Positions 44,821 through 64,000 of a stretch of DNA of 64,000 nt are shown one piece after another (the first letter of the stretch is position 1; each line of letters begins with the position of its first letter). The stretch is from positions 1-64,000 of the IMG/VR virus record IMGVR_UViG_3300030019_000003. One strand, 5' to 3'. The position numbers and the translations under genes were made by a program. The notes under the pieces were generated by a model. The model searched no databases. It was given only the letters and a program-made list of their open reading frames with translations, and was not told where the DNA came from.

Positions 44821-47073
44821 ATGGGTAATATAATGACACTACTTGATAATGTCACAGGTAAAACAATTAATGTGAATGTAGGTAGCGACAGCATACAGGA
44901 AGACGCCAATATTATATTTGGTGGCAATGGCGGTACTGTATTAACCTATGAAGAAATGAATGACCCTAGCAATATACCTGATGGCTTTAAAGCAGGTTTA
45001 AAAACATATTTTGATACTTTGTACTCTGCAGGTAGTGGTGGTTCTGGTACTATTACAGGCTCTTCAACAGCTCCTATTTTAACAGGTCCTAATGTTGGTA
45101 ATGAGACGGCAACAATTACTATAAGTGTTGATAACTACGATCCTTCAAGTATTTATACTTTTGATGTATCTGGTGGTAGTTTTTCAAGAGTAGCAGGTGT
45201 TGTTACGTGGATACTTCCACAAGTAACAGATTCAGCCGCACACAAGCTTACTGTAACTGTAACCAATCCTGGTAAAACAGTAACATCAGTATATCACTCT
45301 GTAAATGTTTTTAATATTAACGCGACTGTCGACTCTATGGTTGTTTACCAGGATACGACTATGGCACAGTTTAGTAATTTATATAATGCTAGTATTGTTA
45401 ATAGTAAGCTATTAGCAACAGACGATACTGTGTTATCAGTAGGAAATAATAAGGTTATCGCCGTAGCTGTTATGGAGAAAGGTGACAATATTTATGTTGA
45501 TGGTAATGTGTATAATGTGGACACGTTAACAACAATGTCACCTATCACTAATGGTGCTTATTTATTATCTACAACTAACAGTGTTCCGTTTTTGACTGCT
45601 GCGAATAGTAGTCCTACTATTGGAACTGCTATAGGTAGTGGCAATTGGTCTACATACTACCAACCCTATACAGTATTTGGAACACCACAATATGGTGTAT
45701 GGGCAGATACTAAGTTAACAAATGCGTGGGTAGGATTTACATTTCTAACTGCTAAAGTTATTAACAAGTACCTTATTAAAGGTTTTAAATTGGTAGGTGG
45801 CAGTGGTGTTACAGCTACATGTGCTCCTAAAAGTTGGATGTTACAGGGTAGTAATGATGGTACAAATTGGGCTACACTAGATACTGTTTTAAACCAGCCA
45901 ACATGGAATGATGATGAGGTTAGAATATTCGTATGCGAAAATGGTGTAGCGTACACAAGTTACAGAATTTTCATTACTGCTAATCAAGGTAACACAACTG
46001 TAAGCGGTCTTAGTAATCTTTCATTCGTAGAGGCAGTAGGCTCAGTAACGTTAGTAACCGGAACAACACCAACTCTACCACAGTTTATTACATCTGCTAA
46101 ATTATTAACAAAATATGGTGAGAGTGCCGTTATAACACAAGATACCTATGAAACAGATTTTACAGGGTTAACAGCTATAGAAGCTATTTATGAACAATAC
46201 AATATTGTGTCAGATTCAACTACAGTAACTTCCGCACCTACGGGAAATGTTATCTTAGGGGATACTGTTATTTTTGGAAATACTACAGATGGTGAAAGAT
46301 CATTAACTGTTAATAGCTCTAACTATAGTAATAATATCTTGGATATTTCATCTTTAGGTTTTACAGTTGTACCGACGTATGGGTATAGAAAAGATTCAGT
46401 TTTAAAAATAAATATAGGTGATAATGTATTATTATCAGATACTAGAACAGATGTTATTTTATCAACTCCTATGTTTGTTTCGGATGGTAGCAAGAATACA
46501 TCTGTTGTAAACGCTGTCCCAGTTTTATCAAGTGCAAGTGCTGCTGTATTATTAGGAGCCGTTTATGGTGGGTATACAGGTTGGTATGCCTTTGACTCAG
46601 GTCTTGTTGATACGGTACAGACATGTTTATTAAATGTTACCGCTACAGTACCATCGTGGTTAGGTTACGACTTTACTAGAAAGATCATTATTAATAAGTA
46701 TGGTATTAATTCTAGAGTGAACTGGAGTGGTCCAGGAACATGGAAGTTACAAGCATCTAATGATAATGTTACGTTTATAGACTTAGACACGCAGACAGGT
46801 ATCACTTGGACAACAACTGCTACTACAAAATGGTTTACATTTAACAATGCCGTTGCTTACAGATATTATAGAATATATGTAACAGCCCCTGTTAACTATA
46901 TCGATATTACAGAGTTAATATTTGTAGAGAACAATTCTACTAAGATGCGGATTAAAACTGATTATAGCGATATCATCACTGGTAATTCAGCTAGAACGTT
47001 AAAGTTCAAAGTTAAGTTAAATAAGATTGGTGATGCACTAGCAAAATTAACAGCAACTATACAAAAACTATAA
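44821..47073 (+). CDS. Tail fibre/receptor-binding protein with two discoidin (F5/8 type C) domains
   Basis: APKSWMLQGSNDGTNWATLD…YTSYRIFIT and PGTWKLQASNDNVTFIDLD…YRYYRIYVT; followed by a tail-assembly-type gene. Confidence 0.75.
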   Translation: MGNIMTLLDNVTGKTINVNVGSDSIQEDANIIFGGNGGTVLTYEEMNDPSNIPDGFKAGLKTYFDTLYSAGSGGSGTITGSSTAPILTGPNVGNETATITISVDNYDPSSIYTFDVSGGSFSRVAGVVTWILPQVTDSAAHKLTVTVTNPGKTVTSVYHSVNVFNINATVDSMVVYQDTTMAQFSNLYNASIVNSKLLATDDTVLSVGNNKVIAVAVMEKGDNIYVDGNVYNVDTLTTMSPITNGAYLLSTTNSVPFLTAANSSPTIGTAIGSGNWSTYYQPYTVFGTPQYGVWADTKLTNAWVGFTFLTAKVINKYLIKGFKLVGGSGVTATCAPKSWMLQGSNDGTNWATLDTVLNQPTWNDDEVRIFVCENGVAYTSYRIFITANQGNTTVSGLSNLSFVEAVGSVTLVTGTTPTLPQFITSAKLLTKYGESAVITQDTYETDFTGLTAIEAIYEQYNIVSDSTTVTSAPTGNVILGDTVIFGNTTDGERSLTVNSSNYSNNILDISSLGFTVVPTYGYRKDSVLKINIGDNVLLSDTRTDVILSTPMFVSDGSKNTSVVNAVPVLSSASAAVLLGAVYGGYTGWYAFDSGLVDTVQTCLLNVTATVPSWLGYDFTRKIIINKYGINSRVNWSGPGTWKLQASNDNVTFIDLDTQTGITWTTTATTKWFTFNNAVAYRYYRIYVTAPVNYIDITELIFVENNSTKMRIKTDYSDIITGNSARTLKFKVKLNKIGDALAKLTATIQKL

Positions 47074-47079
47074 GGAAGT

Positions 47080-47412
47080 ATGATGCAAATTATAGAAACA
47101 TTAAAACAAACAGGTGCCTTTATTAGAAAAGTTTATCAGGAGATTCCTGATACCTATAGTAGTACTAAAGGTAAACGTATGCTAGACGTTAGCCGTATTA
47201 AGGTCACTATTACTATTGATGGTCAAGAGATAGCATTTGATGGTGATGAGCGATCTCAAGATAGGCTTAATCGGGCTTATACAGTAGCTAAAGGTAAGAA
47301 TAAACTTGCTAAATGGAAAACCTACGACAATGCTGATGTTATGCTAACAGCTGATCAAATACTTGATATACTTGATGCAGCCGGAATGGAACAAACTAGT
47401 TTATGGTTTTAA
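47080..47412 (+). CDS. DUF4376-like phage tail-associated small protein
   Basis: IDGQEIAFDGDERSQDRL…WKTYDNADVMLTADQI…LW pattern. Confidence 0.65.
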   Translation: MMQIIETLKQTGAFIRKVYQEIPDTYSSTKGKRMLDVSRIKVTITIDGQEIAFDGDERSQDRLNRAYTVAKGKNKLAKWKTYDNADVMLTADQILDILDAAGMEQTSLWF

Positions 47413-47513
47413 CATACTGCCCAGTATAGTTAGTATATAAAAATTATTATCATACTTATGGTCTAAAAGCCATAAGTATGAATTTTAAATAAAAAAGAGA
47501 GAGAGGAATAATA

Positions 47514-49886
47514 ATGAATAATGTTATGACACTAACAGACCCTATTACCAATAACAATATAAACATTAGTGTAGAGGGTGATAGTATCGTGAAGAGTGTA
47601 GATATTGTTTTTGGAAAAGATGGTGGTAAGGTTATAACTTTTGAAGAGTTATCCGATCCAGCAAAATTGCCAGCTGAATTCTTAGCAGCGGTCAGTGGTA
47701 CTGATGCCGATGGTGTGATTTCTATATTTACAAACGCTACAAGTGATAATGTAATAGCTGATACAGATAAGATACCATTTGTAAATGTTGGTGATGGTAC
47801 TAATGAGAGTATTAACAATATACCATTTGGAAGTTTTAAAACAGAATTAAAAACATATTTTGATACGCAGTATGCCGGTAAAAATGCTGATGGTACCACA
47901 GTAGGTTCATCTGCTGCCCCAGTGATATCAGGACCAGATATTGGTAATGAAACAGCTACTATTGTGCTAACCGTTGACAATTACAATACGAGTAGCATTT
48001 ATACTTTTGATGTAAGTGGTGGTAGTTTCTCTAGATCAGGTGGCGTAGTAACCTGGTTATTACCACAAGTAACAGATTCAACAGCGCATAAGTTAACGGT
48101 GACAGTTACTGATGCTGGTAAGACTCCTACGACTGTTTTTCATTCTGTTAACGTTTTTAATATTAACACTACAGTAGACTCTATGGTACTTTATGAAGGA
48201 AGCACATTAAGCGAGTTTAGCAATTTATACAACATGAGTGTTGTAGCTAGTCGACTACTAGCTACAGGTGATACTATTTTAACTGTTGCTAATAATAAAA
48301 TAGCTACAATTCCAACAATGGAAAGTGGCGATAAGATTTTAGTAGACGGCATAACATATGAAATATCATCTTTTGCCCTTGGTGAAGATGGCGCTAGTAA
48401 TACCTCTTTATTAAGCGCAGTGCCGGTATTAACAAGTAACACTAGTAGCACACTAGGTACAGCTATTTGTAGCAATGCTTACTCTGGTCATGCGGCATTT
48501 AATAGTTTTAATATGGGTAATATAGCTAATAGCTGGATAACGAATAGTTTTGCGGGAACCGACTATTTGGGATTTAATTTTATAGCACCCATAGTTATTA
48601 ACAAGTACACTATGATTGGAAATGGGTATGATAAGGTTTCATCTCCTAAAAGTTGGATATTACAAGCATCTAATGATGGCACAACCTGGGTAAATTTAGA
48701 TACTAGACTTAATCAACCAGTGTGGGTTAATTCAGAGTCAAGAACATACACATTTCTAAACTCAGTACCTTATAAAATTTATAGGGTATACATTACAGCT
48801 AATCAAGGTGGCGTATACGCTCAAATAGGTTACCTATCGTTAATACAGCAAGGTACCGTGATTTCAGCGACATTACCAGTATTACCACAATTTATTACAG
48901 CTGCAAAGTTATTAACTAAATTCGCAGAAACTAATACTATTACACAAGATACATATGAAACAGATTTTACAGGTGTATCAGGGTTGACTGCTGTGTATGA
49001 GCAATACAATTTAATAACAGCTGGTGCAACAGTAACCTCTATTCCAACAGTATCTGCCAATGTGGGCGATATAATTATACTTGGAAATAGCGCAGATGGT
49101 GTTAAAACACTAGAACTTACAACTAGTAATTATACTAATGGCGTTATTGATATTTCATCTTTAGGATTCGCAACTGTACCAACATACGGTTATCGCAAAG
49201 ATGCAAAATTACAAGTTGGGATAGGTAGTAATTCATTTGTAGCAGATAATAGAGTAGATACGATATTATCTTCACCTCTTTTTATAGGTGATGGTGCACA
49301 AAACACATCAACAATTAACGCAATACCATTATTAACAACGGATACCCCAGCTTTAACCAATAGTGCCCTGTACAATGCTACCTACCCAGCATGGCATATT
49401 GCAGATGGTGTACTAGTAGACACTGCGTCAACATGTTTAATACAAGTAGCTGCTGGTGCCCCAGCGTGGTTAAAATATGATTTTAGTAGGCCTATCGTTA
49501 TTAATAAATATGGTATTAATTCTAGAGTAAACTGGTCTGCGCCTACAGCATGGACACTACAAGCATCTGATGATAATATCAATTTTGTTATATTAGACAC
49601 TAGAGTAAATATTGTTTATACCGCAACCGCTGAGACTAAATGGTTTACGTTTAATAACGCAAAAGGTTATAGGTATTATAAACTTGTTATTACGGCGCCT
49701 ATAGCTTCTTATGTGGATATTACAGAATTAATTCTTGTAGAGAATAACTCTTCTAAGATGCAAATTAAGACTGTCTATGACGATATCATTACAGGTAACT
49801 CTGCTAGAACACTTAAGTTTCGTGTTAAACTTAATCAAATCGGAGATGCTGTAGAGAAGATTTCTGGAACAATAGAAAAGTTATAA
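47514..49886 (+). CDS. Tail fibre/receptor-binding protein with two discoidin domains, paralog of 44821-47073
   Basis: SPKSWILQASNDGTTWVNLD and APTAWTLQASDDNINFVILD; long shared segments with the 750-aa gene. Confidence 0.75.
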   Translation: MNNVMTLTDPITNNNINISVEGDSIVKSVDIVFGKDGGKVITFEELSDPAKLPAEFLAAVSGTDADGVISIFTNATSDNVIADTDKIPFVNVGDGTNESINNIPFGSFKTELKTYFDTQYAGKNADGTTVGSSAAPVISGPDIGNETATIVLTVDNYNTSSIYTFDVSGGSFSRSGGVVTWLLPQVTDSTAHKLTVTVTDAGKTPTTVFHSVNVFNINTTVDSMVLYEGSTLSEFSNLYNMSVVASRLLATGDTILTVANNKIATIPTMESGDKILVDGITYEISSFALGEDGASNTSLLSAVPVLTSNTSSTLGTAICSNAYSGHAAFNSFNMGNIANSWITNSFAGTDYLGFNFIAPIVINKYTMIGNGYDKVSSPKSWILQASNDGTTWVNLDTRLNQPVWVNSESRTYTFLNSVPYKIYRVYITANQGGVYAQIGYLSLIQQGTVISATLPVLPQFITAAKLLTKFAETNTITQDTYETDFTGVSGLTAVYEQYNLITAGATVTSIPTVSANVGDIIILGNSADGVKTLELTTSNYTNGVIDISSLGFATVPTYGYRKDAKLQVGIGSNSFVADNRVDTILSSPLFIGDGAQNTSTINAIPLLTTDTPALTNSALYNATYPAWHIADGVLVDTASTCLIQVAAGAPAWLKYDFSRPIVINKYGINSRVNWSAPTAWTLQASDDNINFVILDTRVNIVYTATAETKWFTFNNAKGYRYYKLVITAPIASYVDITELILVENNSSKMQIKTVYDDIITGNSARTLKFRVKLNQIGDAVEKISGTIEKL

Positions 49887-49981: not shown

Positions 49982-50968
49982 ATGCCAGTCGTAAGTGTTT
50001 CGTTCCACGATAAAACAAGCAGAAAAATATTAACTTTAAAATCTAAGAATACGGTTTTAACAGAGGACGTGGTGTTATATTTTAATAACATTGGAGGGAC
50101 ACTCATAACGTATGAAGAGTTACAGAATCCTGATAGCTTACCAGCTGAATTTATAGCAGCCTGTAAAGGTGATGAGGGTAGAGGTATTAGCTCTATTGAT
50201 TTTGATTCAACAACCGATGTTTCTGGTAAAGCAGGCATACCTGGCGCTACAGATACCTATCGTATTAAATACAGTGATGGTAACTTTTCATTCTATAGCC
50301 TCTATAACGGGCTAAGAGTAAGTGATACGATGACAGTAGCACAAATAAACGCAGCTATTGCTTCTGCTATTGATATTGTGGTAGGCGGGGCACCTACACT
50401 TATGGATACTCTAAAAGAATTAGCCGATATGTTTGGGGATGATCCTAACGCATTTAATGCCTTAGTAGCTACAGTTGGTAAAAAAGCGGATCTAACTACA
50501 GTACAAGCTATAAGAGATACATTACAAACTAACATTGATAAAAAAGCAGATACCTCGGCTGTTAATGCACTTGTTAACAATTTAAACAATGCTGATATTG
50601 CTTTACAAAATAATATTAATGCGTTATCCAATAGTACTGCTGCCTCTGTTGCTAAATTATCCATGTTGCCGCAACTTTATAAAATAGCTGATTATCAATT
50701 AGCTTCAGGAGACCAAGCGTGTTCTGTAGATAGTGCTGCTAACATTTATATACCAACTGATGCTGCTGTTGCTTTACCAGTAGGAACTGTTATCGGGTTT
50801 ACCAATATGTCAGGTGGAACAACATATGTAGTTCCTCAAGCTGGTGTAACTTTAATATTATCAGGTACAACAAGTACTGGTAATAGAACATTAAAAACAT
50901 GGGCTACAGGTACATTCCATAAAGTAGGCGCTAACGTCTGGATCATTTCTGGCTCAGGTGTGCTATAA
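49982..50968 (+). CDS. Short tail fibre protein
   Basis: Common phage fibre motif VVGGAPTLMDTLKELADMFGDDPN, a coiled coil, and a small C-terminal beta domain ending WIISGSGV. Confidence 0.7.
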   Translation: MPVVSVSFHDKTSRKILTLKSKNTVLTEDVVLYFNNIGGTLITYEELQNPDSLPAEFIAACKGDEGRGISSIDFDSTTDVSGKAGIPGATDTYRIKYSDGNFSFYSLYNGLRVSDTMTVAQINAAIASAIDIVVGGAPTLMDTLKELADMFGDDPNAFNALVATVGKKADLTTVQAIRDTLQTNIDKKADTSAVNALVNNLNNADIALQNNINALSNSTAASVAKLSMLPQLYKIADYQLASGDQACSVDSAANIYIPTDAAVALPVGTVIGFTNMSGGTTYVVPQAGVTLILSGTTSTGNRTLKTWATGTFHKVGANVWIISGSGVL

Positions 50969-50999: not shown

Positions 51000-51902
51000 A
51001 TGAAAGTTCTTATTTATAAGAATAATAAACTAACTGTTGTTAACGATAATAAATCTGTATTTGAGATTACAGCAGAAAAGCCAGCGTACCTAACAGCAGA
51101 TGAAATTCATTACGATGTTTTTGTAAAAACGATTACTACTAATGGTGTGACGACAGATATGACAGAAAATGAAATGGCTGTCGCTGAGGCATTTATTACC
51201 AGTTATTCTTTTACAGTGGCTGCTGCTGATATAACTCCTGATAATAAAGTTTATTGTATCAATACTTATGGTGACTATATAGGATTTAAAGTACTCACTG
51301 CTAATGAAGTAGCTGTTGCAAGTATGCCACCACAAGATGGTAAACATTATTTTTGGGATGGTACAGATTGGAAACTAGCTATGGCTGTAAATGCATCAGG
51401 CACGTTAGCAGGTTTAGGTATAGTGGCTACTGGTACACAATTTTATATCGACGCCTCATTAGTGACTACAACTGGTTTAACAGCAGCCCAGACTTATGAT
51501 ATTGCAACTAAAACTATCGTCACAAACATGAGTGTAGCTAGAACAACTATTCTAAAATACATCCAACGCAGCATGTTTAACATTTATAATGACAATGTTG
51601 GTATATTGGGGATAAATGAAGTTAGCTCATTCACAACACAGGCTGCTGAAGCCAATGCCTGGAAAGCTGACAATACGTCTTTAACTCCATTTATAGACGT
51701 ATTGCTAATTAGACGTAGACAGAATGAAACTAAAGAAGAGTTGGTAAATAAGATTATTGCCAAGTCATCAGTTTACACACCGGTATCTGCTGGCATTACA
51801 GGTGATTTTCAATATTATAAAAAACGTATTGAAGATGCTACAGATTTACCTAGCTTAATAGTAATTCGTGATGAGTGGGATAAACTAGTGGAGGTAGCCT
51901 AA
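51000..51902 (+). CDS. Tail fibre assembly/chaperone-like protein
   Basis: PPQDGKHYFWDGTDWK and C-terminal EVSSFTTQAAEANAWKADNTSLTPFIDVLL…ETKEELVNKII; paralog of 56741-57688. Confidence 0.6.
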   Translation: MKVLIYKNNKLTVVNDNKSVFEITAEKPAYLTADEIHYDVFVKTITTNGVTTDMTENEMAVAEAFITSYSFTVAAADITPDNKVYCINTYGDYIGFKVLTANEVAVASMPPQDGKHYFWDGTDWKLAMAVNASGTLAGLGIVATGTQFYIDASLVTTTGLTAAQTYDIATKTIVTNMSVARTTILKYIQRSMFNIYNDNVGILGINEVSSFTTQAAEANAWKADNTSLTPFIDVLLIRRRQNETKEELVNKIIAKSSVYTPVSAGITGDFQYYKKRIEDATDLPSLIVIRDEWDKLVEVA

Positions 51903-55444: not shown

Positions 55445-56721
55445 ATATAGAGAAATTCTTAGTTGCAAACAGAACATTAACATTCTTGTTAACATCCATT
55501 TCTATTGCATCTGCGTGGATATGGGCACCTGCATTATTTGTGTCTGCAACGGTAGCCTATAAATGGGGACTAGAAGGGTTATTGTGGTTTCTTATACCTA
55601 ACGTTTTAACATTAGTATTATTTGCTTTTGTTGGAAAAGTTCTAAGAGATAAGGATGAACGTGGGTATACCCTTTCGCAGTATATAAAAGAAAGAACCTC
55701 AAACAGATTACAGTATTTTTATATATTTGAATTACTGCTAATATCGGTATGCTGTATCGCAGTTCAACTGATTGCGGGTGGTAAACTACTATCTGGATTA
55801 TTACCTGTACTAAGTTATTTTGAATGGGTTGCAGTTCTTGGTGGCGTACCTGCTTTATATACTTTCTTTTATGGGATTAAGTCATCTGTTCTTATGGATA
55901 TTATACATTACACACTAATGTTCATATGCCTGGTAGGGATTACATTATTTTTAATATTTAGTAAACATTTAAGCAGTATACCTTTTACAGGTGTTGTTAA
56001 TACATCCAGTCTTAGTATCGCTTTAAGTTTTGGAATACCTACTGCTATAGGGCTATTAGCCGGAGCATTTGGTTCACAGGACTTTTATCAGCGTGCGTAT
56101 GCCGTTGTTAAAGAAGATGTTTTTAAATCCTATCTTGCTGGAGCAGGATTATTTATAGTCATACCTATCATGGTATCATTATTAGGCTTTACAGCTATTA
56201 ACGAAGGTTTTACTATTAAAGATATTGGTATGGTTAACTTTGAAACACTAGGATTTTTAAATATACCTTTAGCATCAACAGCACTAGCTATTGCCATTCT
56301 CTGTGGATTAACGTCGACTATTGATTCTTCTCAAACTTCGGTATCGGCTATATTCGGAAATGATATTTCAAAAATATTTTACGGTGACAGCAAGGTTTGG
56401 TTAGCAAGACTGGGTATTATCATAGTTACGGTGTTAGCTATCATTATTGCTAATACGGGTATTACTATTTTACAACTGTTCTTAACTTATGGTGCTATAA
56501 GATCATCGGTATTCTTAGTCTCATTGATGGCGGTATTAACAGATAGGATACTAAATAGCAACGCTGTTGTATACTCATTATTAGCTGTTGTTTTAATATT
56601 AGTACCTATTAATATTTATGCTATCCTAAATAAGATAGAAATACTACAGACAACGATGGCTATTTTGATTGTTGGCATACCAGGTATTGTTACCTATATA
56701 ACAAGTAAACAAAAAATATAA
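55441..56721 (+). CDS. Sodium:solute symporter (SSS) family transporter
   Basis: About 12 hydrophobic helices; SIASAWIWAPAL, GYTLSQYIKERT, GIKSSVLMDIIH, QDFYQRAYA, GLTSTIDS motifs. Confidence 0.85.
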   Translation: MNIEKFLVANRTLTFLLTSISIASAWIWAPALFVSATVAYKWGLEGLLWFLIPNVLTLVLFAFVGKVLRDKDERGYTLSQYIKERTSNRLQYFYIFELLLISVCCIAVQLIAGGKLLSGLLPVLSYFEWVAVLGGVPALYTFFYGIKSSVLMDIIHYTLMFICLVGITLFLIFSKHLSSIPFTGVVNTSSLSIALSFGIPTAIGLLAGAFGSQDFYQRAYAVVKEDVFKSYLAGAGLFIVIPIMVSLLGFTAINEGFTIKDIGMVNFETLGFLNIPLASTALAIAILCGLTSTIDSSQTSVSAIFGNDISKIFYGDSKVWLARLGIIIVTVLAIIIANTGITILQLFLTYGAIRSSVFLVSLMAVLTDRILNSNAVVYSLLAVVLILVPINIYAILNKIEILQTTMAILIVGIPGIVTYITSKQKI

Positions 56722-56740: not shown

Positions 56741-57688
56741 ATGGCTATAAAAGTACTTATATACGAAAATGGCTTACTTACAGTAACACGTGACTACAGA
56801 AGTGCTGTTAGGATACCAGCAGAAAAACCTAATTTTATTATTGGTGACAGATTTTATTACAGTTCTGAAAAGAAAAGTATCGTTGAAGACTGGAATAATA
56901 CAGCTGAGCTAACAGAGTGTGAAATAAACGCTGCAGAAGAGTTTATCAATAGTTATGTTTTCGCTCCTATTGTTACTATCCCTACTACGATGCCGATGAG
57001 CGACATTAAGGAGCTTGTATTGGTAGATAGCAAGGGTGCCTATAAAGGTACCAGTTTTGCTAATCCTGGGCTTATAGTTGTTCCATTGATGCCTACAGAT
57101 CCTAATAAGTATTATTGGGATTTTGAAACAAATAACTGGATAGAAGGATATACTATAGTAACTGAAACAGGGATGCTAGTAGGAAGCACTATTCTCACAG
57201 GGGAGACCTATTCTTATATACCCGCTTCGTTAGTAGATAAAAATCTGTGTTCTATGTGCCAAGTCTATGATGCCACTCTTAAGAGAGTAGTCATTGACAT
57301 CGCTAAGTATAAGATGAAAGCTTATAAAACAGTATCCGAGGCTATGAGTAAAGCCATTGATACACGTTTAGATAAACCTGGTAAATATGAGGTAGTATCA
57401 TTCTTTGTACAAGTGGCTGAAGCTAAATCTTATTTAACCTTTAAAGATTTTCCAACACCTTATTTAAGTACGTTATTAGCTAGAAGAAAACGTATAATAG
57501 AGGGTAGACCTGAAACCATGGATGATCTTGTTGATAAGATCATTAAGAAGTCAATTCCGTTTGAAATATTTCATGCTGGTGTACTTGGTGAATACCACAG
57601 GCTAAAAGATCTTATTGATAATGCCGAGACGGTAGAAGAGATAGATGCCATAACAGAGACAATGGATTTTTTAGAAAACAAAGAATAA
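56741..57688 (+). CDS. Tail fibre assembly/chaperone-like protein, paralog of 51000-51902
   Basis: KVLIYENGLLTV N-terminus, EVVSFFVQVAEAKSY…TPYLSTLLARR…ETMDDLVDKII C-terminus. Confidence 0.6.
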   Translation: MAIKVLIYENGLLTVTRDYRSAVRIPAEKPNFIIGDRFYYSSEKKSIVEDWNNTAELTECEINAAEEFINSYVFAPIVTIPTTMPMSDIKELVLVDSKGAYKGTSFANPGLIVVPLMPTDPNKYYWDFETNNWIEGYTIVTETGMLVGSTILTGETYSYIPASLVDKNLCSMCQVYDATLKRVVIDIAKYKMKAYKTVSEAMSKAIDTRLDKPGKYEVVSFFVQVAEAKSYLTFKDFPTPYLSTLLARRKRIIEGRPETMDDLVDKIIKKSIPFEIFHAGVLGEYHRLKDLIDNAETVEEIDAITETMDFLENKE

Positions 57689-57782: not shown

Positions 57783-60734
57783 ATGGCGTCATGTACTTTA
57801 ACCGATGAAAAAACCGGCAGTGAAATAAATCTAGAGATGAATGGCCTAACACTGCAAGACAGTGTTTTTTTATTGCCAGTGGTATCTGGACAGATTGCCA
57901 GAGAAGAAGATTATGAAAATGTTGTAAAAAAATATTCAGCTATCCTTAATAAACAAGCATTCTGTATACATACACCTACCATACTTATACCTGAAGATGG
58001 TGCGAAAGATGTTTATGGTGTATTCATGTCAAGTCCATTTTCAACTATCAGTAGTTATAATGGAGAACACCTTGCTTCACAATGGCAGATCGGTATTGAT
58101 TCTACTTTTACTAATAACCTTTATGACTCAGGTGTTAGTACCGACAACTTAACCTCTTGTCTTTTTAACCCTATATTATTTTCAACTACTCATTATGTAA
58201 GGGTACGTTATTTCTCTGCTGAATTTATAAGCAATTGGTCATCAGTAGTCACTTTTGAGAGTAAAGCAACATTGGTTAAAGCTCCAGAGGTTACTACGAA
58301 TGAATCTGCTACAGGAACTTCTTTAACACCTACATTTACAACTAGTGCGTTCTCTGTTCTTAATGGTACAGATACTTTACTAAGTGTAAGCTGGATGATA
58401 GCTAAAGATATCGGGTTCAACCATACTATCCTAGAAAAAACTATCACAGATAACCCAACTATTTTAACACTTGATACACCTTTAGAGATAGGTGTAACCT
58501 ACTTTATTAAAGCACGATTTAACGGTCAGGCATTTACAAGTCCATGGGGCACAGCGTTAATGTTTAAAACAGTAAGTAATACTGAGAAACCTATCTTAAC
58601 AGGTTCATTAGGTATTGTAGAGAATACAACTACAACTGTTAATGTTAGTAACTATAAACCATCTCAAACATATACTTATAGTGTATCACTCGGTGGATGT
58701 ACTTTTTTAGATGGTATCGTAACGTGGAAATTACCACGTGTTAATGGTGATACTGTAGCTGCATTAACAATGACTGCTACGGATACTGTTAATGGTTTAA
58801 ATACCAGTGAAGTAACAGTATTTGCTATTACGGTACTAGATACACCTATGCTAGCAGATAATGTCATTACCTATAATGATACGACAATAGCAGCATCATT
58901 CTTAAATACTAATTTAGAAACAGATAGTAATGAACTTCAACCTGTGTTAGGAGATATTCATGATCTTTATAACAAAAATACTTTAGATAAGATATATGTT
59001 AACACACTTATGTATAACCCTAAATCTGGTGATGTTTTAAAATCTGATAAAGGTGAACTATTTACAGTGGGTAGTATTGGTAATGATGCTGTAGTACCTA
59101 TGATAGGTATTAAAGTTATATCAGGCGGTCTTAGACATTATGCTTGTATAAAAGAAGATGGTTATGTCTATACTGTTGGTGACAATACCTATGGTCAATT
59201 AGGTTTAGGTAACAATGATAATAGTATGGCATGGGTTAATACCGGTATCAAAGCTATACACGTGGTATGCGGATCTTATAGTACTTTTATTATAACTGAA
59301 AATAATGAACTGTTTGCTACAGGTTTAGGAACATCAGGTGAATTCGGTAGTGCTTCTGAAATACGTAACACTTTCTTAACATGTAACATTAATGTTAAAG
59401 CAGTTGATATTAGCGATCGTACTACTGTGATTATTGATCTAAATGATAATGCTATGATTACGGGTAAAAACACTTATGGTCAATGCTCTGATGGTAGTGT
59501 TGTGACACGCTACAGTTGGAATAACACTAATATCAAAGCTAGTAAAGTATTTGCAGGGTTACATAATATAGGCTGTATTGATTCTACGGGTATAACTTAT
59601 ACTGCGGGTAGGAATGATTATAATCAATGTGGTTATGCTAACAATGGTGAAGATACCAGTGTAAAAGCTTTAAATCCTTTAGATGTAACATGTGATACAT
59701 TAGCATTTGGAGACGCGCATCTTGTTATTAAGAAACCGGATAGTACTATATGGGGTATTGGTAGAAATGACCTAGGTCAAGTAGGTTTAAAACATTATGA
59801 TGTTGTAGACGTATTAACACAAACTACTTATACCGCAGCAAGTATTTTTTCAAGAGGAAACTATTCTGCTTTATTAACAAGTGATGGTAAAATTCTAACT
59901 ACAGGTTTCTCTGGTAACGGTGAGACAGGTAAGAATAGTGTTAACAATACAAATGATTACTCGATGGTTCTATCAGGTGCTGTTGCGCTTGCTGGAGGGT
60001 ATTACGGTATACTTATGTTAACATCAACCGGAACACTTTATATAACGGGTAAGAATGATTTAGGTCAATTAGGTGTTAATAGTAAGAATACGGTAATGTA
60101 CCTTATTCCTACTTTGTCATTAATGCAAAAGATCTTTACAAATGTAAATACTAAACCCAATACATGGATAACACCGTTAGGGTCACCTTTAGCATCTCCT
60201 GCTTTAAAAGTGTATATACAAAAGCATTACGGCATTTCATTACCTGTTACACAAGAGGCAGGCGAGAATAACTTCGCGCAGGTATATACATCTTATACAA
60301 CTGAAAGAGTGGTAGACGTGTTAAATCATGATAAGCTTAATGCCCCAGATAGACTCTATATTGATAATAGATTATTAGATAGTGCTATTGGGATGTGGTT
60401 TATTACAGATTATGGCCAAATATTCTATGCTAAAAATGTTGGTACAGATGATGCGGTCATTAGCGTATATTTGGATAAGGAATATTTTGTAACCTATTAT
60501 ATTATTCCTGATAGAGAACTTGCTAAGATACCTTTAGCTGTTTATTCTATTACAACGGTTAGCTACAACGAAGCAACTCCTGCTCCGATAGATGCTACCT
60601 ATTTAAATAATGTACTAGTGGTAACCTATGATATTGCAGATATTACACCAACACAGGTTGTTACAACCACAGTGGTTATTCCTTCTAGCAATATACTAAC
60701 AAGCCTTACAGAGTATTTATACAAATTGAAATAA
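57783..60734 (+). CDS. Large tail appendage protein: Fn3/Ig-like modules + RCC1-like beta-propeller
   Basis: Repeats such as VYTVGDNTYGQLGLG, TGKNTYGQC, AGRNDYNQCG, GRNDLGQVG, TGKNDLGQLG. Confidence 0.75.
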   Translation: MASCTLTDEKTGSEINLEMNGLTLQDSVFLLPVVSGQIAREEDYENVVKKYSAILNKQAFCIHTPTILIPEDGAKDVYGVFMSSPFSTISSYNGEHLASQWQIGIDSTFTNNLYDSGVSTDNLTSCLFNPILFSTTHYVRVRYFSAEFISNWSSVVTFESKATLVKAPEVTTNESATGTSLTPTFTTSAFSVLNGTDTLLSVSWMIAKDIGFNHTILEKTITDNPTILTLDTPLEIGVTYFIKARFNGQAFTSPWGTALMFKTVSNTEKPILTGSLGIVENTTTTVNVSNYKPSQTYTYSVSLGGCTFLDGIVTWKLPRVNGDTVAALTMTATDTVNGLNTSEVTVFAITVLDTPMLADNVITYNDTTIAASFLNTNLETDSNELQPVLGDIHDLYNKNTLDKIYVNTLMYNPKSGDVLKSDKGELFTVGSIGNDAVVPMIGIKVISGGLRHYACIKEDGYVYTVGDNTYGQLGLGNNDNSMAWVNTGIKAIHVVCGSYSTFIITENNELFATGLGTSGEFGSASEIRNTFLTCNINVKAVDISDRTTVIIDLNDNAMITGKNTYGQCSDGSVVTRYSWNNTNIKASKVFAGLHNIGCIDSTGITYTAGRNDYNQCGYANNGEDTSVKALNPLDVTCDTLAFGDAHLVIKKPDSTIWGIGRNDLGQVGLKHYDVVDVLTQTTYTAASIFSRGNYSALLTSDGKILTTGFSGNGETGKNSVNNTNDYSMVLSGAVALAGGYYGILMLTSTGTLYITGKNDLGQLGVNSKNTVMYLIPTLSLMQKIFTNVNTKPNTWITPLGSPLASPALKVYIQKHYGISLPVTQEAGENNFAQVYTSYTTERVVDVLNHDKLNAPDRLYIDNRLLDSAIGMWFITDYGQIFYAKNVGTDDAVISVYLDKEYFVTYYIIPDRELAKIPLAVYSITTVSYNEATPAPIDATYLNNVLVVTYDIADITPTQVVTTTVVIPSSNILTSLTEYLYKLK

Positions 60735-60743
60735 GGACAAGAC

Positions 60744-63700
60744 GTGAATTCTATTTTAGATAAAATAAAACCTATCATTAGTTTATATCATATTTCTAAA
60801 AAGTTTATGATAAGGGTGTTCTTAACAGATCATCCTACTACTGATATAACCATAACCTTTCCAAGAGAAGATGGAACATTGTTAACAGTAGATGAATTAG
60901 ATACTACTATATTAACAACAGCAGAAATTGCCTCTAATAATATACTTGCTATCGTAAAACCGGCTATTACTTTTCCAGTTAATGGGGCAACAGGTTTCTA
61001 CGGTACTGTTATAGCAACGCCTTACCAGTATAATGGAAACTTTATAGGTGAACATACTGGAACAGATTGGGAGTTTTCTACAGTAGCTGATTTCTCTGTA
61101 AAAGAAACAGCTATTAAGAATGATATGATAAACCTAACAAGTTATCCTATTGATCCTAACCTAACAGATACTCTTTATTATGCTAGAGTTAGATACCGAA
61201 GCGGTACTATCGTTAGTCAGTATTCAGATGTCATTAGTTTTACAACACCTTCTGGATATGCCGTTAAGCCTACAATTTCTGTTAAAAATGATAGATTTAA
61301 AACATCTTTGTTACCTAATCTAGCATTAACAGATCTTAAGATCATTGGTGATAACGATACTATTACTAAAGTAGATTGGGAGGTAAGCGCTAATCTTAAC
61401 TTCACCGATATCAAATTCAGTTCTTATAACGATACTGTGAATCTTACAGGTATCACCGTATCAAGTGGTGTAGCGGTAGGTAACACTTATTTTGCTAGAG
61501 CTAGACAATATGGTGATAAGTATGAAACTAGTTGGTCTGAGCCAACGAGCTTTACAGCGGGTACACAAACTACTGATCCTATATTAGTAGGTGATACAGA
61601 AGCCTATGAAAGAGGCACACTAACTGTTACTATTTCTAACTATGATAGTAACTGTTCATATACCATTACTAATAATGGTGGTAGTGTTACTCGTAGCGAT
61701 GATGTTCTAACATGGGTGCTACCAGGTGTTGTTACAGATCAAGATTATTTTTTAAGTGTTACAGCCAAAGATCTTTTAGGTGGTTTACCTGTAAGTAATA
61801 GTGTTAAACATACTGTTACAGTTATGAATATTGCAACAGGTTATGACCAGATGCTATCGTATAACCCAACTACGATTCCGTTATCTTTTAAAGATACCTC
61901 TTTGAATCTTGTAAATGGTGTATCTGAAAATAGACCTTTCAATCTACATGATAAAAGTATTGCTAGTAGAGTAGATAAGATAGCGATTAATAACTATTAC
62001 TATACACCAGTAGTAGGCGATAAACTCTATACCGATACAGCTGAAGAATTTGAAGTAAAATCGTTTACAGCAAATGTCACTGTTGATCTTACAAATGTAA
62101 TATCCGGGGCATGTGGTTCTGATTATACAATGTTATTAAAAAGTAATGGTGACCTGTATGCAGCTGGATCTAACATGTATGGTCAATTAGGTTTACCCGA
62201 TACTATTGCTGGAGTAGAATATTTTACATTAGTAACAACGGGTGTTAAACAAGTAAGCGCTGGTCTCTATCATACTGTTATTGTTAAAAATGATGGTAAG
62301 GTTTATGTTACAGGAAGAAATAACTTTGGGCAACTAGGGTTAGGAGATAATGTAGATAGGCACGGTTTTACAGAATTGAGTATTGGTAGCTTACTTACAG
62401 TATTTGCTTTTGATAATCAAATAGCTGTATTAAGAACAACAGGTACCGTTGCAACATGTGGGTATAACATGGGTGGCGAGTGTGGTGTAGGTGACCTTAG
62501 TAACAAGATGGCTCTTACGGAAACAAACCTAACAGGTATTACCTTTATTGTTGTAACAGGTAGTGGTATAGCATGTCTTGATGCTGCTGGTAATGGATAT
62601 GTTACTGGATTAAACACACAGGGTATGTTAGGTACTGGAAATACTACTCCAACAACTACTTTTATTAAAACAAGTACTACAGGTTTATTAAACTTAAGCA
62701 TAGGCTATACTCATGGGTTGTTTGTAAAAGCAGATGGTACAGTAGTAGTTGTAGGTTCAAATACTTATGGACAAATTGGTCAAGGCGTGTTACCTAGTTC
62801 AAGTGCGCTATTAACATTACCTATTACTAATATTAAAAAAGCATTTGCCCCTAGATGGAGTAGTTTACTATTAGCTAATGACGGTAGTGTATATGCAGCT
62901 GGATTTAATAACTTTGGTCAAACTGGCCTAGAAGTTACAACTGCTAATATTACAGCATTTACATTAACAGGATATAAAGCTTCTGATATCATAGCTGGTC
63001 CAAACCATACATTAGTTATTAAAGCAGACGGGTCAATACTTTTATTTGGACTAAATGCAAGTAACCAACTTGGTTTTAAATCAAGAGATATTAACAAGAT
63101 TTATATTAACACACCAAGTTTGTATTATCCGGATATGTATGTTACACCTGTTACTAACTTGGGACATGTACCTATTGGTGTACATCGTAAAGATGTTACT
63201 ATTATAGCAGAGCCAGTTGTTCAAAATACAGGTGATTCTGATTTTTCAGCTGTTAATGATTGTGTTATTTCAGAGTCTACTCGTAATGTGATAGACAGTA
63301 CATTACAATCAACGGCTAATAAGCTTTACATCAATAACCAGTATGTTGACTTAAAACTAGGTCAGCAACTTATAACTGAGAATAACGAAATTATTACCAT
63401 AGGTAATATTGGTAGTGATGGTTCTGATACTGCTATATCTGGTATCAAAAGTATTATAGGTGCTACTTCAGGTGTGTTTGCTATTAAAGAAAACTCTGAG
63501 CTTTGGTATATAGGTTTAAACATCTACGGTGAAGCTGGTGTTGGCCATAATAGTAATCTAACGGAATGGGCCTATTGTGGTATTAAAGTTAGTTCAATTG
63601 CTACAGGTAAAGGATTTACATTAGCCATTAGAGATACTGATGGAATGGTTCTTAGTGCAGGTATTAATGTTTATGGCCAATTAGGACTAGGTACCGTTAC

Positions 63701-64000
63701 TGATACTAATATCTGGAAAGAATCTAATTTTTATGCAACTCGTGTAGCTGCTGGTAATAACCATGCTTTAGCACTAGATCTACAAGGATTACTTTATGCT
63801 GTAGGTTTAAATAATCATGGACAACTTGGTATTAACTCATCTACTATTCTTAATAAGACCGTGTGGACAGCTTGTGTTCTTCCTCCTACTGTTTATACTG
63901 TAGCTGCTAGAATCTATTGTGGCGGTGATAGTTCTTACGTTATTAGAACAGATAGTGTGTTATATTCAGCCGGTAGAAATGATTATGGTCAATTAGGTAT
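60744..64000 (+). CDS. Very large tail appendage protein with Fn3/Ig-like modules and at least two RCC1-like propellers, partial (runs off the window end)
   Basis: GTG start behind AAGGA; frame checked by hand at several points (HTGTDWEFS, AAGSNMYGQLG, final YSAGRNDYGQLG); missing from the ORF track because no stop lies in the window. Confidence 0.75.
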   Translation, partial: MNSILDKIKPIISLYHISKKFMIRVFLTDHPTTDITITFPREDGTLLTVDELDTTILTTAEIASNNILAIVKPAITFPVNGATGFYGTVIATPYQYNGNFIGEHTGTDWEFSTVADFSVKETAIKNDMINLTSYPIDPNLTDTLYYARVRYRSGTIVSQYSDVISFTTPSGYAVKPTISVKNDRFKTSLLPNLALTDLKIIGDNDTITKVDWEVSANLNFTDIKFSSYNDTVNLTGITVSSGVAVGNTYFARARQYGDKYETSWSEPTSFTAGTQTTDPILVGDTEAYERGTLTVTISNYDSNCSYTITNNGGSVTRSDDVLTWVLPGVVTDQDYFLSVTAKDLLGGLPVSNSVKHTVTVMNIATGYDQMLSYNPTTIPLSFKDTSLNLVNGVSENRPFNLHDKSIASRVDKIAINNYYYTPVVGDKLYTDTAEEFEVKSFTANVTVDLTNVISGACGSDYTMLLKSNGDLYAAGSNMYGQLGLPDTIAGVEYFTLVTTGVKQVSAGLYHTVIVKNDGKVYVTGRNNFGQLGLGDNVDRHGFTELSIGSLLTVFAFDNQIAVLRTTGTVATCGYNMGGECGVGDLSNKMALTETNLTGITFIVVTGSGIACLDAAGNGYVTGLNTQGMLGTGNTTPTTTFIKTSTTGLLNLSIGYTHGLFVKADGTVVVVGSNTYGQIGQGVLPSSSALLTLPITNIKKAFAPRWSSLLLANDGSVYAAGFNNFGQTGLEVTTANITAFTLTGYKASDIIAGPNHTLVIKADGSILLFGLNASNQLGFKSRDINKIYINTPSLYYPDMYVTPVTNLGHVPIGVHRKDVTIIAEPVVQNTGDSDFSAVNDCVISESTRNVIDSTLQSTANKLYINNQYVDLKLGQQLITENNEIITIGNIGSDGSDTAISGIKSIIGATSGVFAIKENSELWYIGLNIYGEAGVGHNSNLTEWAYCGIKVSSIATGKGFTLAIRDTDGMVLSAGINVYGQLGLGTVTDTNIWKESNFYATRVAAGNNHALALDLQGLLYAVGLNNHGQLGINSSTILNKTVWTACVLPPTVYTVAARIYCGGDSSYVIRTDSVLYSAGRNDYGQLG

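What the first reader, a model, noticed from the sequence alone, without database searches (positions are those of the whole stretch)
44821..64000. One tail-appendage scaffold with plug-in binding domains (discoidin versus RCC1 propeller)
Seen in sequence: four large proteins (44821, 47514, 57783, 60744) share the same run of segments. These are an Ig-like unit ILxG…E…xVxNYxxxxxYT…GG…VxTWxLPxV, then DxxxxYxxTT…F, then K-I-x-V…GDxxxxD, then an inserted domain, then a return segment …TQxxxExxF. In the first two proteins the insert is a discoidin (F5/8C) carbohydrate-binding domain, with a second discoidin later. In the last two it is an RCC1-like beta-propeller, duplicated in the final gene. Between the two discoidin paralogs the second discoidin is nearly identical while the first has diverged. 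Inference: a modular chassis that swaps receptor-binding heads gives this phage a multi-receptor arsenal.
Basis: partly seen in the sequence, partly recalled or inferred. Interest (0 to 1): 0.6.

Follow-up and report, generated by a model that had tools for sequence, protein, structure and literature searches.

The report
Phage fibre scaffold with plug-in heads
A 252-kb peat-soil jumbo phage encodes at least eight related large proteins built on one stalk, in which a small "socket" domain carries a sugar-binding discoidin domain, a seven-bladed propeller or nothing in the same loop, so this phage lineage varies its probable host-binding heads by domain insertion.

Summary
All four ORFs exist. 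The fourth runs past the window end, to 64748 (1334 aa). The two groups share an Ig-like unit plus linker (BLASTP E 8e-13; hhalign 98%, E 7e-14).

In the RCC1 group I defined a ~100-aa "socket" unit. Its two halves are contiguous in three cases and split by a ~340-aa RCC1 propeller in nine. In two sockets of a related phage the insert is ~550-570 aa, because a glycine-rich domain is nested inside the propeller.

The flanks of discoidin 1 resemble the two socket halves only weakly, but reproducibly (shuffle z 4.5 and 7.0). The flanks of discoidin 2 do not. "Second discoidin nearly identical" is overstated: 62% against 38% identity.

The genome holds four more paralogs outside the window, two of them without heads. 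One orthologous propeller sits in socket 1 here and in socket 2 in a related 239-kb phage.

A profile search found 560 representative proteins with the Ig unit. About 39 of the best 150 carry the wider chassis, some with laminin-G or Kelch heads at the same position. Two of these lie in tail-gene neighbourhoods of small phages.

Tail location and receptor binding remain inferred. Verdict: a new variant of a known kind.

The parts
44821..47073 (+). Discoidin-type fibre paralog 1 (750 aa, P0001). Layout: N-terminal anchor 1-75, Ig-like unit 81-165, linker and socket pre-half 166-240, discoidin 1 insert 241-410, socket post-half with ITQDTYETDF 411-455, middle beta region 456-580, discoidin 2 581-705, C-tail 706-750.
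   Evidence: ORF. Pfam F5_F8_type_C, 2 stretches. phrog_17517 'tail protein' E 6.6e-43. Domain limits.
45061..45315 (+). Ig-like unit of P0001. This is the segment most strongly shared with the RCC1 group.
   Evidence: BLASTP E 8e-13. hhalign 98%. AF2 beta-sandwich strands 92-164, pLDDT 61-72.
45541..46050 (+). Discoidin (F5/8C) domain 1 of P0001, lying between segments that resemble the socket pre-half and post-half.
   Evidence: PHROG stretch 252-403. Shuffle tests of the flanks, z 4.5 and 7.0. 38% identity to its paralog.
46561..46935 (+). Discoidin (F5/8C) domain 2 of P0001, near the C-terminus and not in a recognisable socket.
   Evidence: Pfam best stretch 606-692. Flanks not significant against the socket halves. 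62% identity to its paralog.
47080..47412 (+). 110-aa DUF4376 protein directly downstream of the discoidin gene. The same pairing is seen in two other metagenomic relatives. It may be a fibre accessory or assembly protein.
   Evidence: Pfam PF14301, 35 bits against cut-off 25. phrog_2837 and phrog_1141 tail or tail-fibre families. Conserved synteny.
47514..49886 (+). Discoidin-type fibre paralog 2 (790 aa, P0002). Same layout as P0001, with about 50 extra residues after the N-terminal anchor.
   Evidence: 51% identity to P0001 over the full length. Pfam F5_F8_type_C, 2 stretches.
49982..50968 (+). 328-aa helical fibre-like protein that shares the ~60-aa N-terminal anchor with the two discoidin proteins.
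   Evidence: BLASTP 43% over 54 aa, E 1e-8, to P0002. N-terminal HMM. Several PHROG tail-fibre families over residues 112-223.
57783..60734 (+). RCC1-type paralog (983 aa, P0003). Layout: N-terminus 1-60, two FN3-like domains 61-266, Ig 267-355, linker 356-384, socket 1 pre-half 385-440, RCC1 propeller 441-779, socket 1 post-half 780-835 (VTQEAGENNF), empty socket 2 836-935, C-terminal beta region 936-983.
   Evidence: Pfam WD40_RLD, 168.7 bits. AF2 mean pLDDT 76.3. UVR8 Z 48.3, rmsd 1.9 A over 343 residues. Socket HMM hits 391-438, 783-832 and 836-931.
59103..60119 (+). Seven-bladed RCC1-like propeller inserted in socket 1 of P0003.
   Evidence: Foldseek 4dnw_A E 2.9e-25, TM 0.84 by target. 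VIA Z 48.3. Low-pLDDT tethers at 436-440 and 765-792.
60288..60587 (+). Empty socket 2 of P0003. Both halves are contiguous, joined by a 14-aa low-confidence loop (890-903) at the exact place where paralogs carry a propeller.
   Evidence: Alignment of empty sockets. Alignment with 60744's filled socket 2. pLDDT 31 for the loop.
60744..64000 (+). RCC1-type paralog with both sockets filled. It is 1334 aa in the genome, ending at 64748 outside the window. Propeller 1 covers residues 449-784. Propeller 2 covers 899-1244 and is cut by the window end. The true start may be the ATG at 60807.
   Evidence: ORF open at the window end. Full ORF. Pfam 338 bits. Socket HMM hits 393-446 / 774-838 and 844-937 / 1253-1283.

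Best explanation
The region is part of a tandem family of at least eight paralogous surface fibre or adhesin proteins of a phiKZ-related jumbo phage from peat. They are probably virion proteins.

All members share a stalk made of beta-sandwich modules: a short N-terminal anchor, an Ig-like unit, a linker, and one or two copies of a ~100-aa "socket" domain. The RCC1 group also has two FN3-like domains after the anchor.

The socket has a permissive loop between its third and fourth strands. In different paralogs and orthologs that loop is short (empty), holds a ~340-aa RCC1-like seven-bladed propeller, or (in the two discoidin proteins) holds an F5/8C discoidin domain.

The inserted domain types are ones whose N- and C-termini lie side by side, so they can hang from a loop without disturbing the host domain. 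That point comes from established structural knowledge, not from a test here.

The family grew by tandem duplication and by gain, loss or relocation of heads between sockets. The likely function is adsorption: the heads act as lectin-like binders for different host surface glycans, and the stalk attaches them to the virion.

Shown here: the architecture, the empty and filled socket states, the folds of the propeller and the stalk modules of P0003, the socket change between orthologs, and the wider chassis family with other heads.

Inferred: virion location (tail or elsewhere), oligomeric state, ligand binding and the multi-receptor role.
For: Family and architecture:
- Seven places in the genome match the Ig unit. 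All-against-all BLAST links 8 ORFs between 44.8 and 77.6 kb.
- The socket halves are contiguous in g75716, in P0003 unit 2 and in P0008 unit 1. They are split by 336-357 aa in nine units and by 545-569 aa in two.
- With inserts removed, seven proteins align collinearly from end to end.
- P0003 AF2 model: pLDDT 76; beta strands on both sides of the propeller; disordered tethers; a disordered loop in the empty socket.
- Propeller fold: Z 48.3 to UVR8 and E 2.9e-25.

Link between the discoidin and RCC1 groups:
- hhalign 98%.
- Flank shuffle tests z 4.5 and 7.0.
- The GD register is the same as in the RCC1 group.

Mobility of heads:
- The P0003 socket-1 propeller is sister to the socket-2 propeller of its ortholog P0008 (support 98/99). 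Four other ortholog pairs keep their socket.

Generality:
- 560 representative proteins match the Ig-linker-pre-half profile. About 39 of the top 150 cover the profile to position 150 or beyond.
- Heads among 31 of these: RCC1 13, Laminin_G_3 5, F5/8C 4, Kelch 1, FG-GAP 1, SPRY 1.
- In P0057 laminin-G lies between the GD segment and ITQDTSDTNF. In P0100 a Kelch propeller lies in a second socket.

Heads vary faster than the chassis among five discoidin homologs: 42-43% identity against 68-73%.

Virion or tail hints:
- P0057 lies at the end of a tail module after a tape-measure gene. P0048 lies next to SU10 adaptor-like and portal genes.
- An FN3-like domain is 43% identical to part of an annotated tail fibre of Nitratiruptor phage NrS-2, two genes after its tape measure.
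- DUF4376 neighbour.
- RCC1-like 'DNA condensation' proteins are in the phAPEC6 structural proteome (PMC7247149).
- BFVD matches include RCC1-bearing tail-fibre proteins of Pseudomonas phages Littlefix and PollyC.

The locus is assembled identically in four independent peat metagenomes.
Against: - There is no direct evidence that any of these proteins is in the virion or binds anything.
- No recognisable sheath, baseplate or tape-measure gene adjoins the cluster.
- The array is interrupted by metabolic-looking genes: radical SAM, QueC-like, methyltransferase and a Na:solute symporter.
- The AF2 model of P0001 is poor (pLDDT 44.9), so the socket fold of the discoidin proteins is untested structurally.
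- The socket HMM alone does not reach significance on the discoidin proteins.
- Discoidin 2 is not in a recognisable socket.
- I had no model coordinates, so packing of the pre-half and post-half in P0003 is inferred from the empty sockets, not seen.
- The socket change between orthologs could be reciprocal loss from an ancestor with two filled sockets rather than a move (branch lengths do not decide).
Confidence: 0.6

Rival explanations
1. These are virion decoration fibres (capsid or sheath "hairs" or whiskers, Hoc-like adhesins) rather than baseplate receptor-binding fibres. They would give weak, reversible sticking to cells, biofilm or peat matrix and would not set host range.
For: - The beads-on-a-string Ig and FN3 architecture folds well as a monomer, unlike classical intertwined trimeric fibres.
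- phAPEC6 has hairy appendages on head and tail and eleven RCC1-like proteins, some of them in its structural proteome (PMC7247149).
- Iyer et al. 2021 describe lectin domains, discoidin among them, on various virion components of jumbo phages (PMC7824862).
- No baseplate genes are adjacent.
Against: - Distant chassis homologs sit at the end of tail modules in small phages.
- The FN3-like domain is shared with an annotated tail fibre.
- A DUF4376 gene, a family PHROGs labels tail or tail fibre, lies downstream.
Confidence: 0.22
2. There is no common scaffold. The two groups merely share a promiscuous, mobile Ig-like domain, and the other "shared segments" are chance motifs.
For: - The Ig unit occurs in 560 representative proteins, often as tandem arrays of up to 25 copies.
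- Outside the Ig unit and linker, each discoidin-to-RCC1 match is individually non-significant.
- The flanks of discoidin 2 do not match the socket.
- The register of the K-I-x-V / GD segment is ambiguous between methods.
Against: - Four collinear matches in the same order: N-terminus, Ig plus linker, TQ..DF, C-terminus.
- Flank-specific shuffle tests give z 4.5 and 7.0 with 0 of 500 shuffles reaching the observed score.
- Intermediate chassis proteins (P0057, P0048, P0052) carry the same GD...[head]...TP..P...TQD..D.DF arrangement with laminin-G or unassigned heads.
- RCC1-group N-termini are the best non-seed hits of the discoidin N-terminal HMM, at the right position.
Confidence: 0.12
3. 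These are non-structural proteins acting inside the infected cell or on host chromatin or DNA, as the database label [quoted passage not shown] suggests.
For: - PHROGs files the RCC1 families under DNA, RNA and nucleotide metabolism.
- The phAPEC6 authors speculated on a DNA-ordering role.
- Neighbouring genes include enzymes and a transporter.
Against: - The label is inherited from eukaryotic RCC1. Here the propeller is a loop insert in a stalk of Ig and FN3 modules that alternates with discoidin, laminin-G and Kelch heads, which is typical of extracellular adhesion.
- Homologs lie in tail modules.
Confidence: 0.05

Closest known systems
"Evolved" Dit and other tail proteins of lactococcal and streptococcal siphophages, with carbohydrate-binding modules inserted in loops (PMC6669499, PMC10688798, PMC7533335)
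   Same: A conserved structural tail protein carries a sugar-binding module as an insertion inside a host domain. Presence or absence of the module differs between related phages, and the modules add host-adhesion capacity.
   Different: The host domain here is not Dit. No sequence or family match to Dit or galectin was found. The inserts include whole seven-bladed propellers and, in a relative, a further domain nested inside the propeller. The phage is a phiKZ-related jumbo myovirus-type genome.
RCC1-like proteins of jumbo phages (phAPEC6, GAP32, PBECO4, 121Q group; SP-15; phiCD211) and RCC1-bearing tail fibres of Pseudomonas phages Littlefix and PollyC
   Same: RCC1-like seven-bladed propellers are encoded in multiple copies by large phages. 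Some are found in the virion proteome (PMC7247149) or annotated as tail fibre.
   Different: Those in phAPEC6 are mostly ~40-kDa stand-alone propellers annotated as DNA condensation proteins. Sequence identity to the present propellers is only 25-28%. None is described as a loop insert in a socket domain.
Discoidin, laminin-G3 and SPRY lectin domains on jumbo-phage virion proteins (Iyer et al. 2021, PMC7824862); C-terminal discoidin-like domain of the LKA1 tailspike gp49 (PMC5701251)
   Same: Beta-sandwich lectin domains of the same families are attached to phage adsorption proteins.
   Different: These are described as terminal or tandem domains. Here the first discoidin is internal, flanked by the two halves of a socket that in paralogs hosts a propeller.
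phiKZ gp131 C-terminal seven-bladed beta-propeller (PDB 4gbf)
   Same: It is a propeller domain on a structural protein of a phiKZ-type phage. From my own knowledge of the literature, not tested here, it is located at the baseplate periphery. It is a structural match to the P0003 propeller (Z 16.8).
   Different: The match is at the generic propeller level only, far below the RCC1 matches (Z 36-48). gp131's propeller is C-terminal, not an insert. No sequence relation was tested.
T4 Hoc and other Ig-like decoration proteins
   Same: A string of Ig/FN3-like modules exposed on the virion, proposed to mediate weak adhesion.
   Different: Hoc has no inserted lectin or propeller heads and is a single-copy capsid protein. 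No sequence similarity was tested or found.

Membership tests
F5/8 type C (discoidin) domain, PF00754 | Sequence match above Pfam's gathering score | tested here: met
   P0001 37.6 bits and P0002 36.6 bits against cut-off 28.2, two stretches each.
F5/8 type C (discoidin) domain, PF00754 | Eight-stranded beta-barrel jelly-roll fold with ligand-binding loops | tested here: inconclusive
   In the AF2 model of P0001 only the discoidin cores reach pLDDT 55-87 and the overall mean is 44.9. No fold search was run on it.
RCC1-like domain (RLD) seven-bladed propeller, PF25390 / PF00415 | Sequence match above the gathering score | tested here: met
   WD40_RLD 168.7 bits (P0003), 277.6 bits (P0004) and 338 bits (full 1334-aa protein) against cut-off 150.
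RCC1-like domain (RLD) seven-bladed propeller, PF25390 / PF00415 | Seven-bladed propeller fold | tested here: met
   VIA Z 48.3, rmsd 1.9 A, 343 residues aligned to UVR8 8gqe_B. Foldseek TM 0.84-0.85 by target.
RCC1-like domain (RLD) seven-bladed propeller, PF25390 / PF00415 | Guanine-nucleotide-exchange or chromatin-binding function of eukaryotic RCC1 | not testable with these tools
The context (loop insert in an Ig/FN3 stalk) argues for a binding-module role instead.
Phage tail fibre / receptor-binding protein | Part of the virion, attached to tail or baseplate | not testable with these tools
   The genome is uncultured and comes from peat metagenomes. There is no proteome or micrograph.
Phage tail fibre / receptor-binding protein | Encoded in or next to the tail morphogenesis module | tested here: inconclusive
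   In the own genome no sheath or Baseplate_J match was found anywhere by Pfam, and the neighbours are unassigned or enzymes. Distant chassis homologs P0057 and P0048 do lie in tail-gene neighbourhoods.
Phage tail fibre / receptor-binding protein | Dedicated downstream accessory or chaperone gene that binds the fibre | tested here: inconclusive
   A DUF4376 gene follows the discoidin gene in three genomic contexts. The complex prediction gave no answer.
Evolved Dit-type tail proteins with inserted CBMs | Binding module inserted within a loop of a structural host domain, variably present among relatives | tested here: met
   Empty against filled sockets at one loop. Other head types at the same place in relatives.
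Evolved Dit-type tail proteins with inserted CBMs | Host protein is Dit (N-terminal ring domain plus galectin-like domain) | tested here: not met
   No Pfam or PHROG Dit family was hit by any of the four proteins. The architecture is anchor-(FN3)-Ig-socket. So it works like an evolved Dit but is not a member.
DGR-diversified receptor-binding proteins | Reverse transcriptase and template repeat in the genome; hypervariable target positions | tested here: not met
   No RVT_1 match in the 252-kb genome. The discoidin locus is identical except for one SNP across four peat metagenomes.

The most novel reading that the evidence does not exclude
The ~100-aa socket is a dedicated, evolvable insertion platform used across unrelated phage morphotypes (jumbo phiKZ-like, siphophage-like and SU10-like contigs). 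Any binding domain with adjacent termini (RCC1, Kelch, discoidin, laminin-G) could be dropped into, removed from or moved between sockets. Further domains can be nested inside the guest, as with the glycine-rich domain inside an RCC1 propeller in the related phage. This would be a general route to new phage adsorption specificities, distinct from the familiar swapping of C-terminal tips.
Probability: 0.35. Interest if true: 0.7.

Novelty: new variant of a known kind. Interest (0 to 1): 0.55.

Why it matters
Phage host range is usually thought to evolve by exchanging the C-terminal tips of fibres, or by insertions into a few well-studied lactococcal baseplate proteins. This locus shows a compact repeated host domain with clear empty and occupied states, several guest folds, and an orthologous guest sitting in different sockets in two phages.

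If the sockets tolerate foreign domains, they would give a natural blueprint for displaying binding modules on phage fibres. They would also give a sequence signature (Ig unit, GD strand, guest, TQ..DF) for finding adsorption proteins in uncultured jumbo phages, whose adsorption apparatus is largely unannotated. Finally, it reinterprets the many "regulator of chromosome condensation" annotations in phage genomes as probable adhesion modules.

Tried and rejected
- **Megablast against phages.** The discoidin locus found nothing in 50,697 phage records. tblastn with P0003 found only 25-28% propeller matches and one FN3-like match.
- **AF2 of P0001.** Run with a five-sequence alignment, it gave pLDDT 44.9 and cannot be used for the socket question.
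- **Fold searches with the 983-aa P0003 model.** The propeller filled the lists, so the socket, Ig and FN3 parts were barely tested. The Atlas structure search of residues 836-983 gave only TM < 0.4. I make no claim that the socket fold is new.
- **Socket HMM against the discoidin proteins without a prior on position.** Not significant.
- **Pfam searches of the genome.** No match for Phage_sheath_1, Baseplate_J or RVT_1. phiKZ-type structural proteins are probably too divergent for these models, so this does not show the genes are absent. The reverse-transcriptase result argues against a DGR.
- **Complex prediction.** P0001 560-750 with the DUF4376 protein gave no answer (score 0.00). This is not evidence either way.
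- **Word-based homolog search.** It found only five and two relatives. The exhaustive profile search was needed.
- **Cluster look-up.** Ten chassis relatives returned no names.
- **Reads.** Only Logan contigs were available, so rare variants and expression could not be assessed.


Full report
**Setting**

The window is the first 64 kb of a 252,159-bp IMG/VR virus record with terminal repeats, about 34% G+C. Upstream genes match phiKZ-type core families:
- RNA polymerase beta subunit, phrog_3015, E 1e-136;
- DNA polymerase, phrog_3011;
- several families labelled "virion structural protein".

The nearest cultured relatives of the RNA polymerase subunit are only about 30% identical (Burkholderia phage FLC9, Ralstonia phage RP12). 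The discoidin locus occurs in at least 17 peat-metagenome runs. In four of them it is identical apart from one SNP at 49347. The sequence is therefore a real, recurrent genome and shows no hypervariability.

**The observation**

All four ORFs are present. The last one runs off the window and ends at 64748, giving 1334 aa.

- Pfam finds two F5/8C domains in each of the first two proteins.
- It finds one RCC1-like propeller in the third and two in the fourth.
- The two discoidin proteins are 51% identical end to end.
- The two RCC1 proteins are 27% identical over 927 columns.

Between the groups, the Ig-like unit and the following linker are clearly homologous: BLASTP E 8e-13 and hhalign 98%, E 6.7e-14.

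Identity by segment is Ig 76%, discoidin 1 38%, discoidin 2 62% and C-tail 73%.

**The socket**

Comparing the RCC1-type proteins with each other and with relatives showed a repeated unit of about 100 aa. It reads K-I-Y-I-N-N ... G-D-x-L ... E-x-F-T-V-x-S-V-x-D-D-G, then a loop, then Y-K-P-N-Y-W-I-x-P ... V-P-x-A-V-Y. In the first unit this is followed by I-T-Q-D-x-G-D-x-D-F.

- In three units the two halves are contiguous: genome ORF 75716 unit 1, P0003 unit 2 and P0008 unit 1.
- In nine units they are separated by 336-357 aa, which is one propeller.
- In two units of the related phage they are separated by 545-569 aa.
- With the inserts cut out, seven proteins align collinearly from N-terminus to C-terminus.

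The AF2 model of P0003 (mean pLDDT 76.3) shows the expected features:
- beta strands on both sides of the propeller;
- low-confidence tethers at 436-440 and 765-792;
- in the empty second socket, a disordered loop (890-903) exactly where the neighbouring paralog has its second propeller.

The insert is a bona fide seven-bladed RCC1 fold: Z 48.3, rmsd 1.9 A over 343 residues to UVR8, and Foldseek E 2.9e-25. I had no coordinates, so the packing of the two socket halves is inferred from the empty sockets, not seen directly.

**Do the discoidin proteins use the same socket?**

The evidence is only moderate. A socket HMM does not reach significance on them. Beyond the Ig unit and linker, profile-profile matches are weak but collinear: N-terminus E 1.6e-3, ITQDTYETDF E 0.06, C-terminal ...IQKL E 0.3.

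I then tested the hypothesis at its predicted positions, scoring the five discoidin homologs jointly against column-permuted controls:

| Segment tested | Profile | Observed (bits) | Shuffled mean and SD | z | Shuffles reaching observed |
|---|---|---|---|---|---|
| 55 aa before discoidin 1 | pre-half | 35.3 | -0.6 +/- 7.9 | 4.5 | 0 of 500 |
| 50 aa after discoidin 1 | post-half | 47.6 | -2.5 +/- 7.2 | 7.0 | 0 of 500 |
| flanks of discoidin 2 and other segments | either half | not significant | | <= 1.3 | |

The best HMM alignment puts the G-D strand of the discoidin proteins in register with that of the RCC1 group, so the guest sits in the same loop. MAFFT and hhalign prefer a register shifted by one strand. 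The P0001 model is too poor to decide (pLDDT 44.9).

**More members**

The genome has four further paralogs just outside the window:
- 64757-68800, with two propellers;
- 69917-74116, with one clear and one degenerate propeller;
- 74152-75750, with no head;
- 75716-77620, with no head.

The 328-aa helical fibre-like protein at 49982 shares the roughly 60-aa N-terminal anchor of the discoidin proteins. The best non-seed hits of that anchor profile are RCC1-group N-termini, though weakly (E 0.0085 to 0.9).

**A related phage**

A 239-kb contig encodes one discoidin homolog, again followed by a DUF4376 gene, and three RCC1 proteins in the same order as here. Chassis and propellers pair up as orthologs.

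In a maximum-likelihood tree four propeller pairs keep their socket. The socket-1 propeller of P0003 is instead sister (support 98/99) to the socket-2 propeller of its ortholog P0008, whose socket 1 is empty. This is either a move between sockets or reciprocal loss from a doubly filled ancestor. Either way, whole propellers are gained or lost cleanly at the loop.

In two sockets of the related phage the propeller itself is interrupted by a ~200-230-aa glycine-rich domain, an insertion within an insertion.

**The wider family**

A profile of Ig unit, linker and pre-half (14 sequences) was searched against 1.84 billion representatives. It found 560 proteins at E <= 0.001 and 226 at E <= 1e-10. 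Many hold tandem Ig units. About 39 of the best 150 match to profile position 150 or beyond.

Among 31 of these, Pfam finds RCC1 in 13, Laminin_G_3 in 5, F5/8C in 4, and Kelch, FG-GAP and SPRY once each.

- The RCC1-type relatives show the same pre-half, guest, post-half pattern. Some also have empty sockets, and one has three sockets.
- In P0057 a laminin-G domain (403-568) lies between ...V-N-G-D-I-I-N-V-D-G... and ...I-T-Q-D-T-S-D-T-N-F.
- P0048 and P0052 show the same frame.
- In P0100 a Kelch propeller follows a second G-D strand and is followed by a T-P...V-P...F-Y return.

The chassis-plus-guest design is therefore not peculiar to this genome.

**Function**

Nothing here shows virion location or binding. 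Hints for a tail or adsorption role:
- P0057 is the last large gene of a tail module after a tape-measure gene.
- P0048 follows an SU10 adaptor-like gene.
- The FN3-like domain of the RCC1 group is 43% identical to part of an annotated tail fibre of Nitratiruptor phage NrS-2, two genes after its tape measure.
- The DUF4376 neighbour belongs to families labelled tail or tail fibre.
- RCC1-like proteins occur in the phAPEC6 structural proteome and in annotated tail fibres of two Pseudomonas phages.
- Among the five discoidin homologs the heads are the least conserved parts (42-43% against 68-73% for the chassis), as expected for specificity determinants.

Points against a firm call:
- No recognisable baseplate genes are adjacent.
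- The array is interrupted by genes for a radical-SAM enzyme, a QueC-like protein, a methyltransferase and a Na:solute symporter.
- The well-folded beads-on-a-string model would equally suit capsid or sheath decoration fibres, such as the "hairs" of phAPEC6.
- The complex prediction with the DUF4376 protein gave no answer.

**Comparison and novelty**

- Loop insertion of carbohydrate-binding modules into tail proteins is known from "evolved" Dit and related proteins of dairy phages.
- Discoidin, laminin-G and SPRY domains are known on jumbo-phage virion proteins.
- Multiple RCC1-like genes are known in Rak2/121Q-type jumbo phages.

What I did not find described:
- a dedicated, repeated socket domain with empty and filled states;
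- several guest folds, including whole propellers;
- socket-to-socket differences between orthologs;
- nested guests.

My literature search for RCC1-like receptor-binding proteins in bacteriophages returned nothing, but the library is incomplete. I rate this a new variant of a known kind, of moderate interest. The architecture is well supported, and the function is plausible but untested.

Noticed in passing
window 52693-56721: Four co-directional genes split the fibre array. They are a radical-SAM protein (52693-53715), a QueC-like protein (53739-54707), a class I methyltransferase (54710-55444) and a 426-aa sodium:solute symporter family membrane protein (55441-56721; PF00474 E 8e-17, phrog_20720 E 3e-70). 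The related 239-kb phage has three radical-SAM genes just upstream of its RCC1 array (L012 5239-8425). A phage-encoded SSF transporter is unusual, and its role here is unknown.
   Followed up: partly
window 51000-51902 and 56741-57688: Two paralogous genes (31% identity over 313 aa, E 2e-36; phrog_2618, unknown function) bracket the enzyme and transporter block, as if marking a duplicated boundary.
   Followed up: no
L012 13665-18305 (protein residues ~600-800) and P0008 residues ~740-970: In the related phage a ~200-230-aa glycine-rich domain (weak PF21722 Gly_rich_2) is nested inside the RCC1 propeller, which is itself inserted in a socket. That makes three levels of domain nesting.
   Followed up: partly
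L013 1446-3065 (minus strand): A 206-kb metagenomic contig carries a distant chassis relative (P0009). It also encodes a reverse transcriptase (RVT_1, 539 aa) beside an 814-aa FN3/Ig-type protein. This could be a diversity-generating retroelement. The window's own genome has no reverse transcriptase.
   Followed up: no
window 60744-60807; genome 75716-75752: Two listed starts are probably too far upstream. Alignment with paralogs suggests the 60744 gene starts at the ATG at 60807 (M-I-R-V-F-L-T-D). It also suggests the 75716 ORF starts at 75752, right after the stop of the preceding gene.
   Followed up: partly
genome 77687-78364 (outside the window; L008 17687-18361): A 225-aa protein with a weak endolysin-family match (phrog_315, E 1.6e-5) directly follows the last chassis paralog.
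   Followed up: no
window 47456-47980, minus strand: A 174-aa ORF lies antisense to the start of the second discoidin gene. It is probably spurious and was not examined.
   Followed up: no
genome 69367-69867 (outside the window): A 166-aa ORF lies upstream of the 1399-aa paralog. It has a faint resemblance to the DUF4376 protein (41% over 27 aa, E 0.21). This is not significant, but the position parallels the discoidin-DUF4376 pairing.
   Followed up: no
one search hits P0012, P0014, P0030 and others: The Ig-like unit, which has no Pfam match above threshold in these proteins, occurs in tandem arrays of 15-25 copies in giant metagenomic proteins of 3000-6000 aa. It appears to be an uncatalogued or very divergent Ig-like repeat family.
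   Followed up: no
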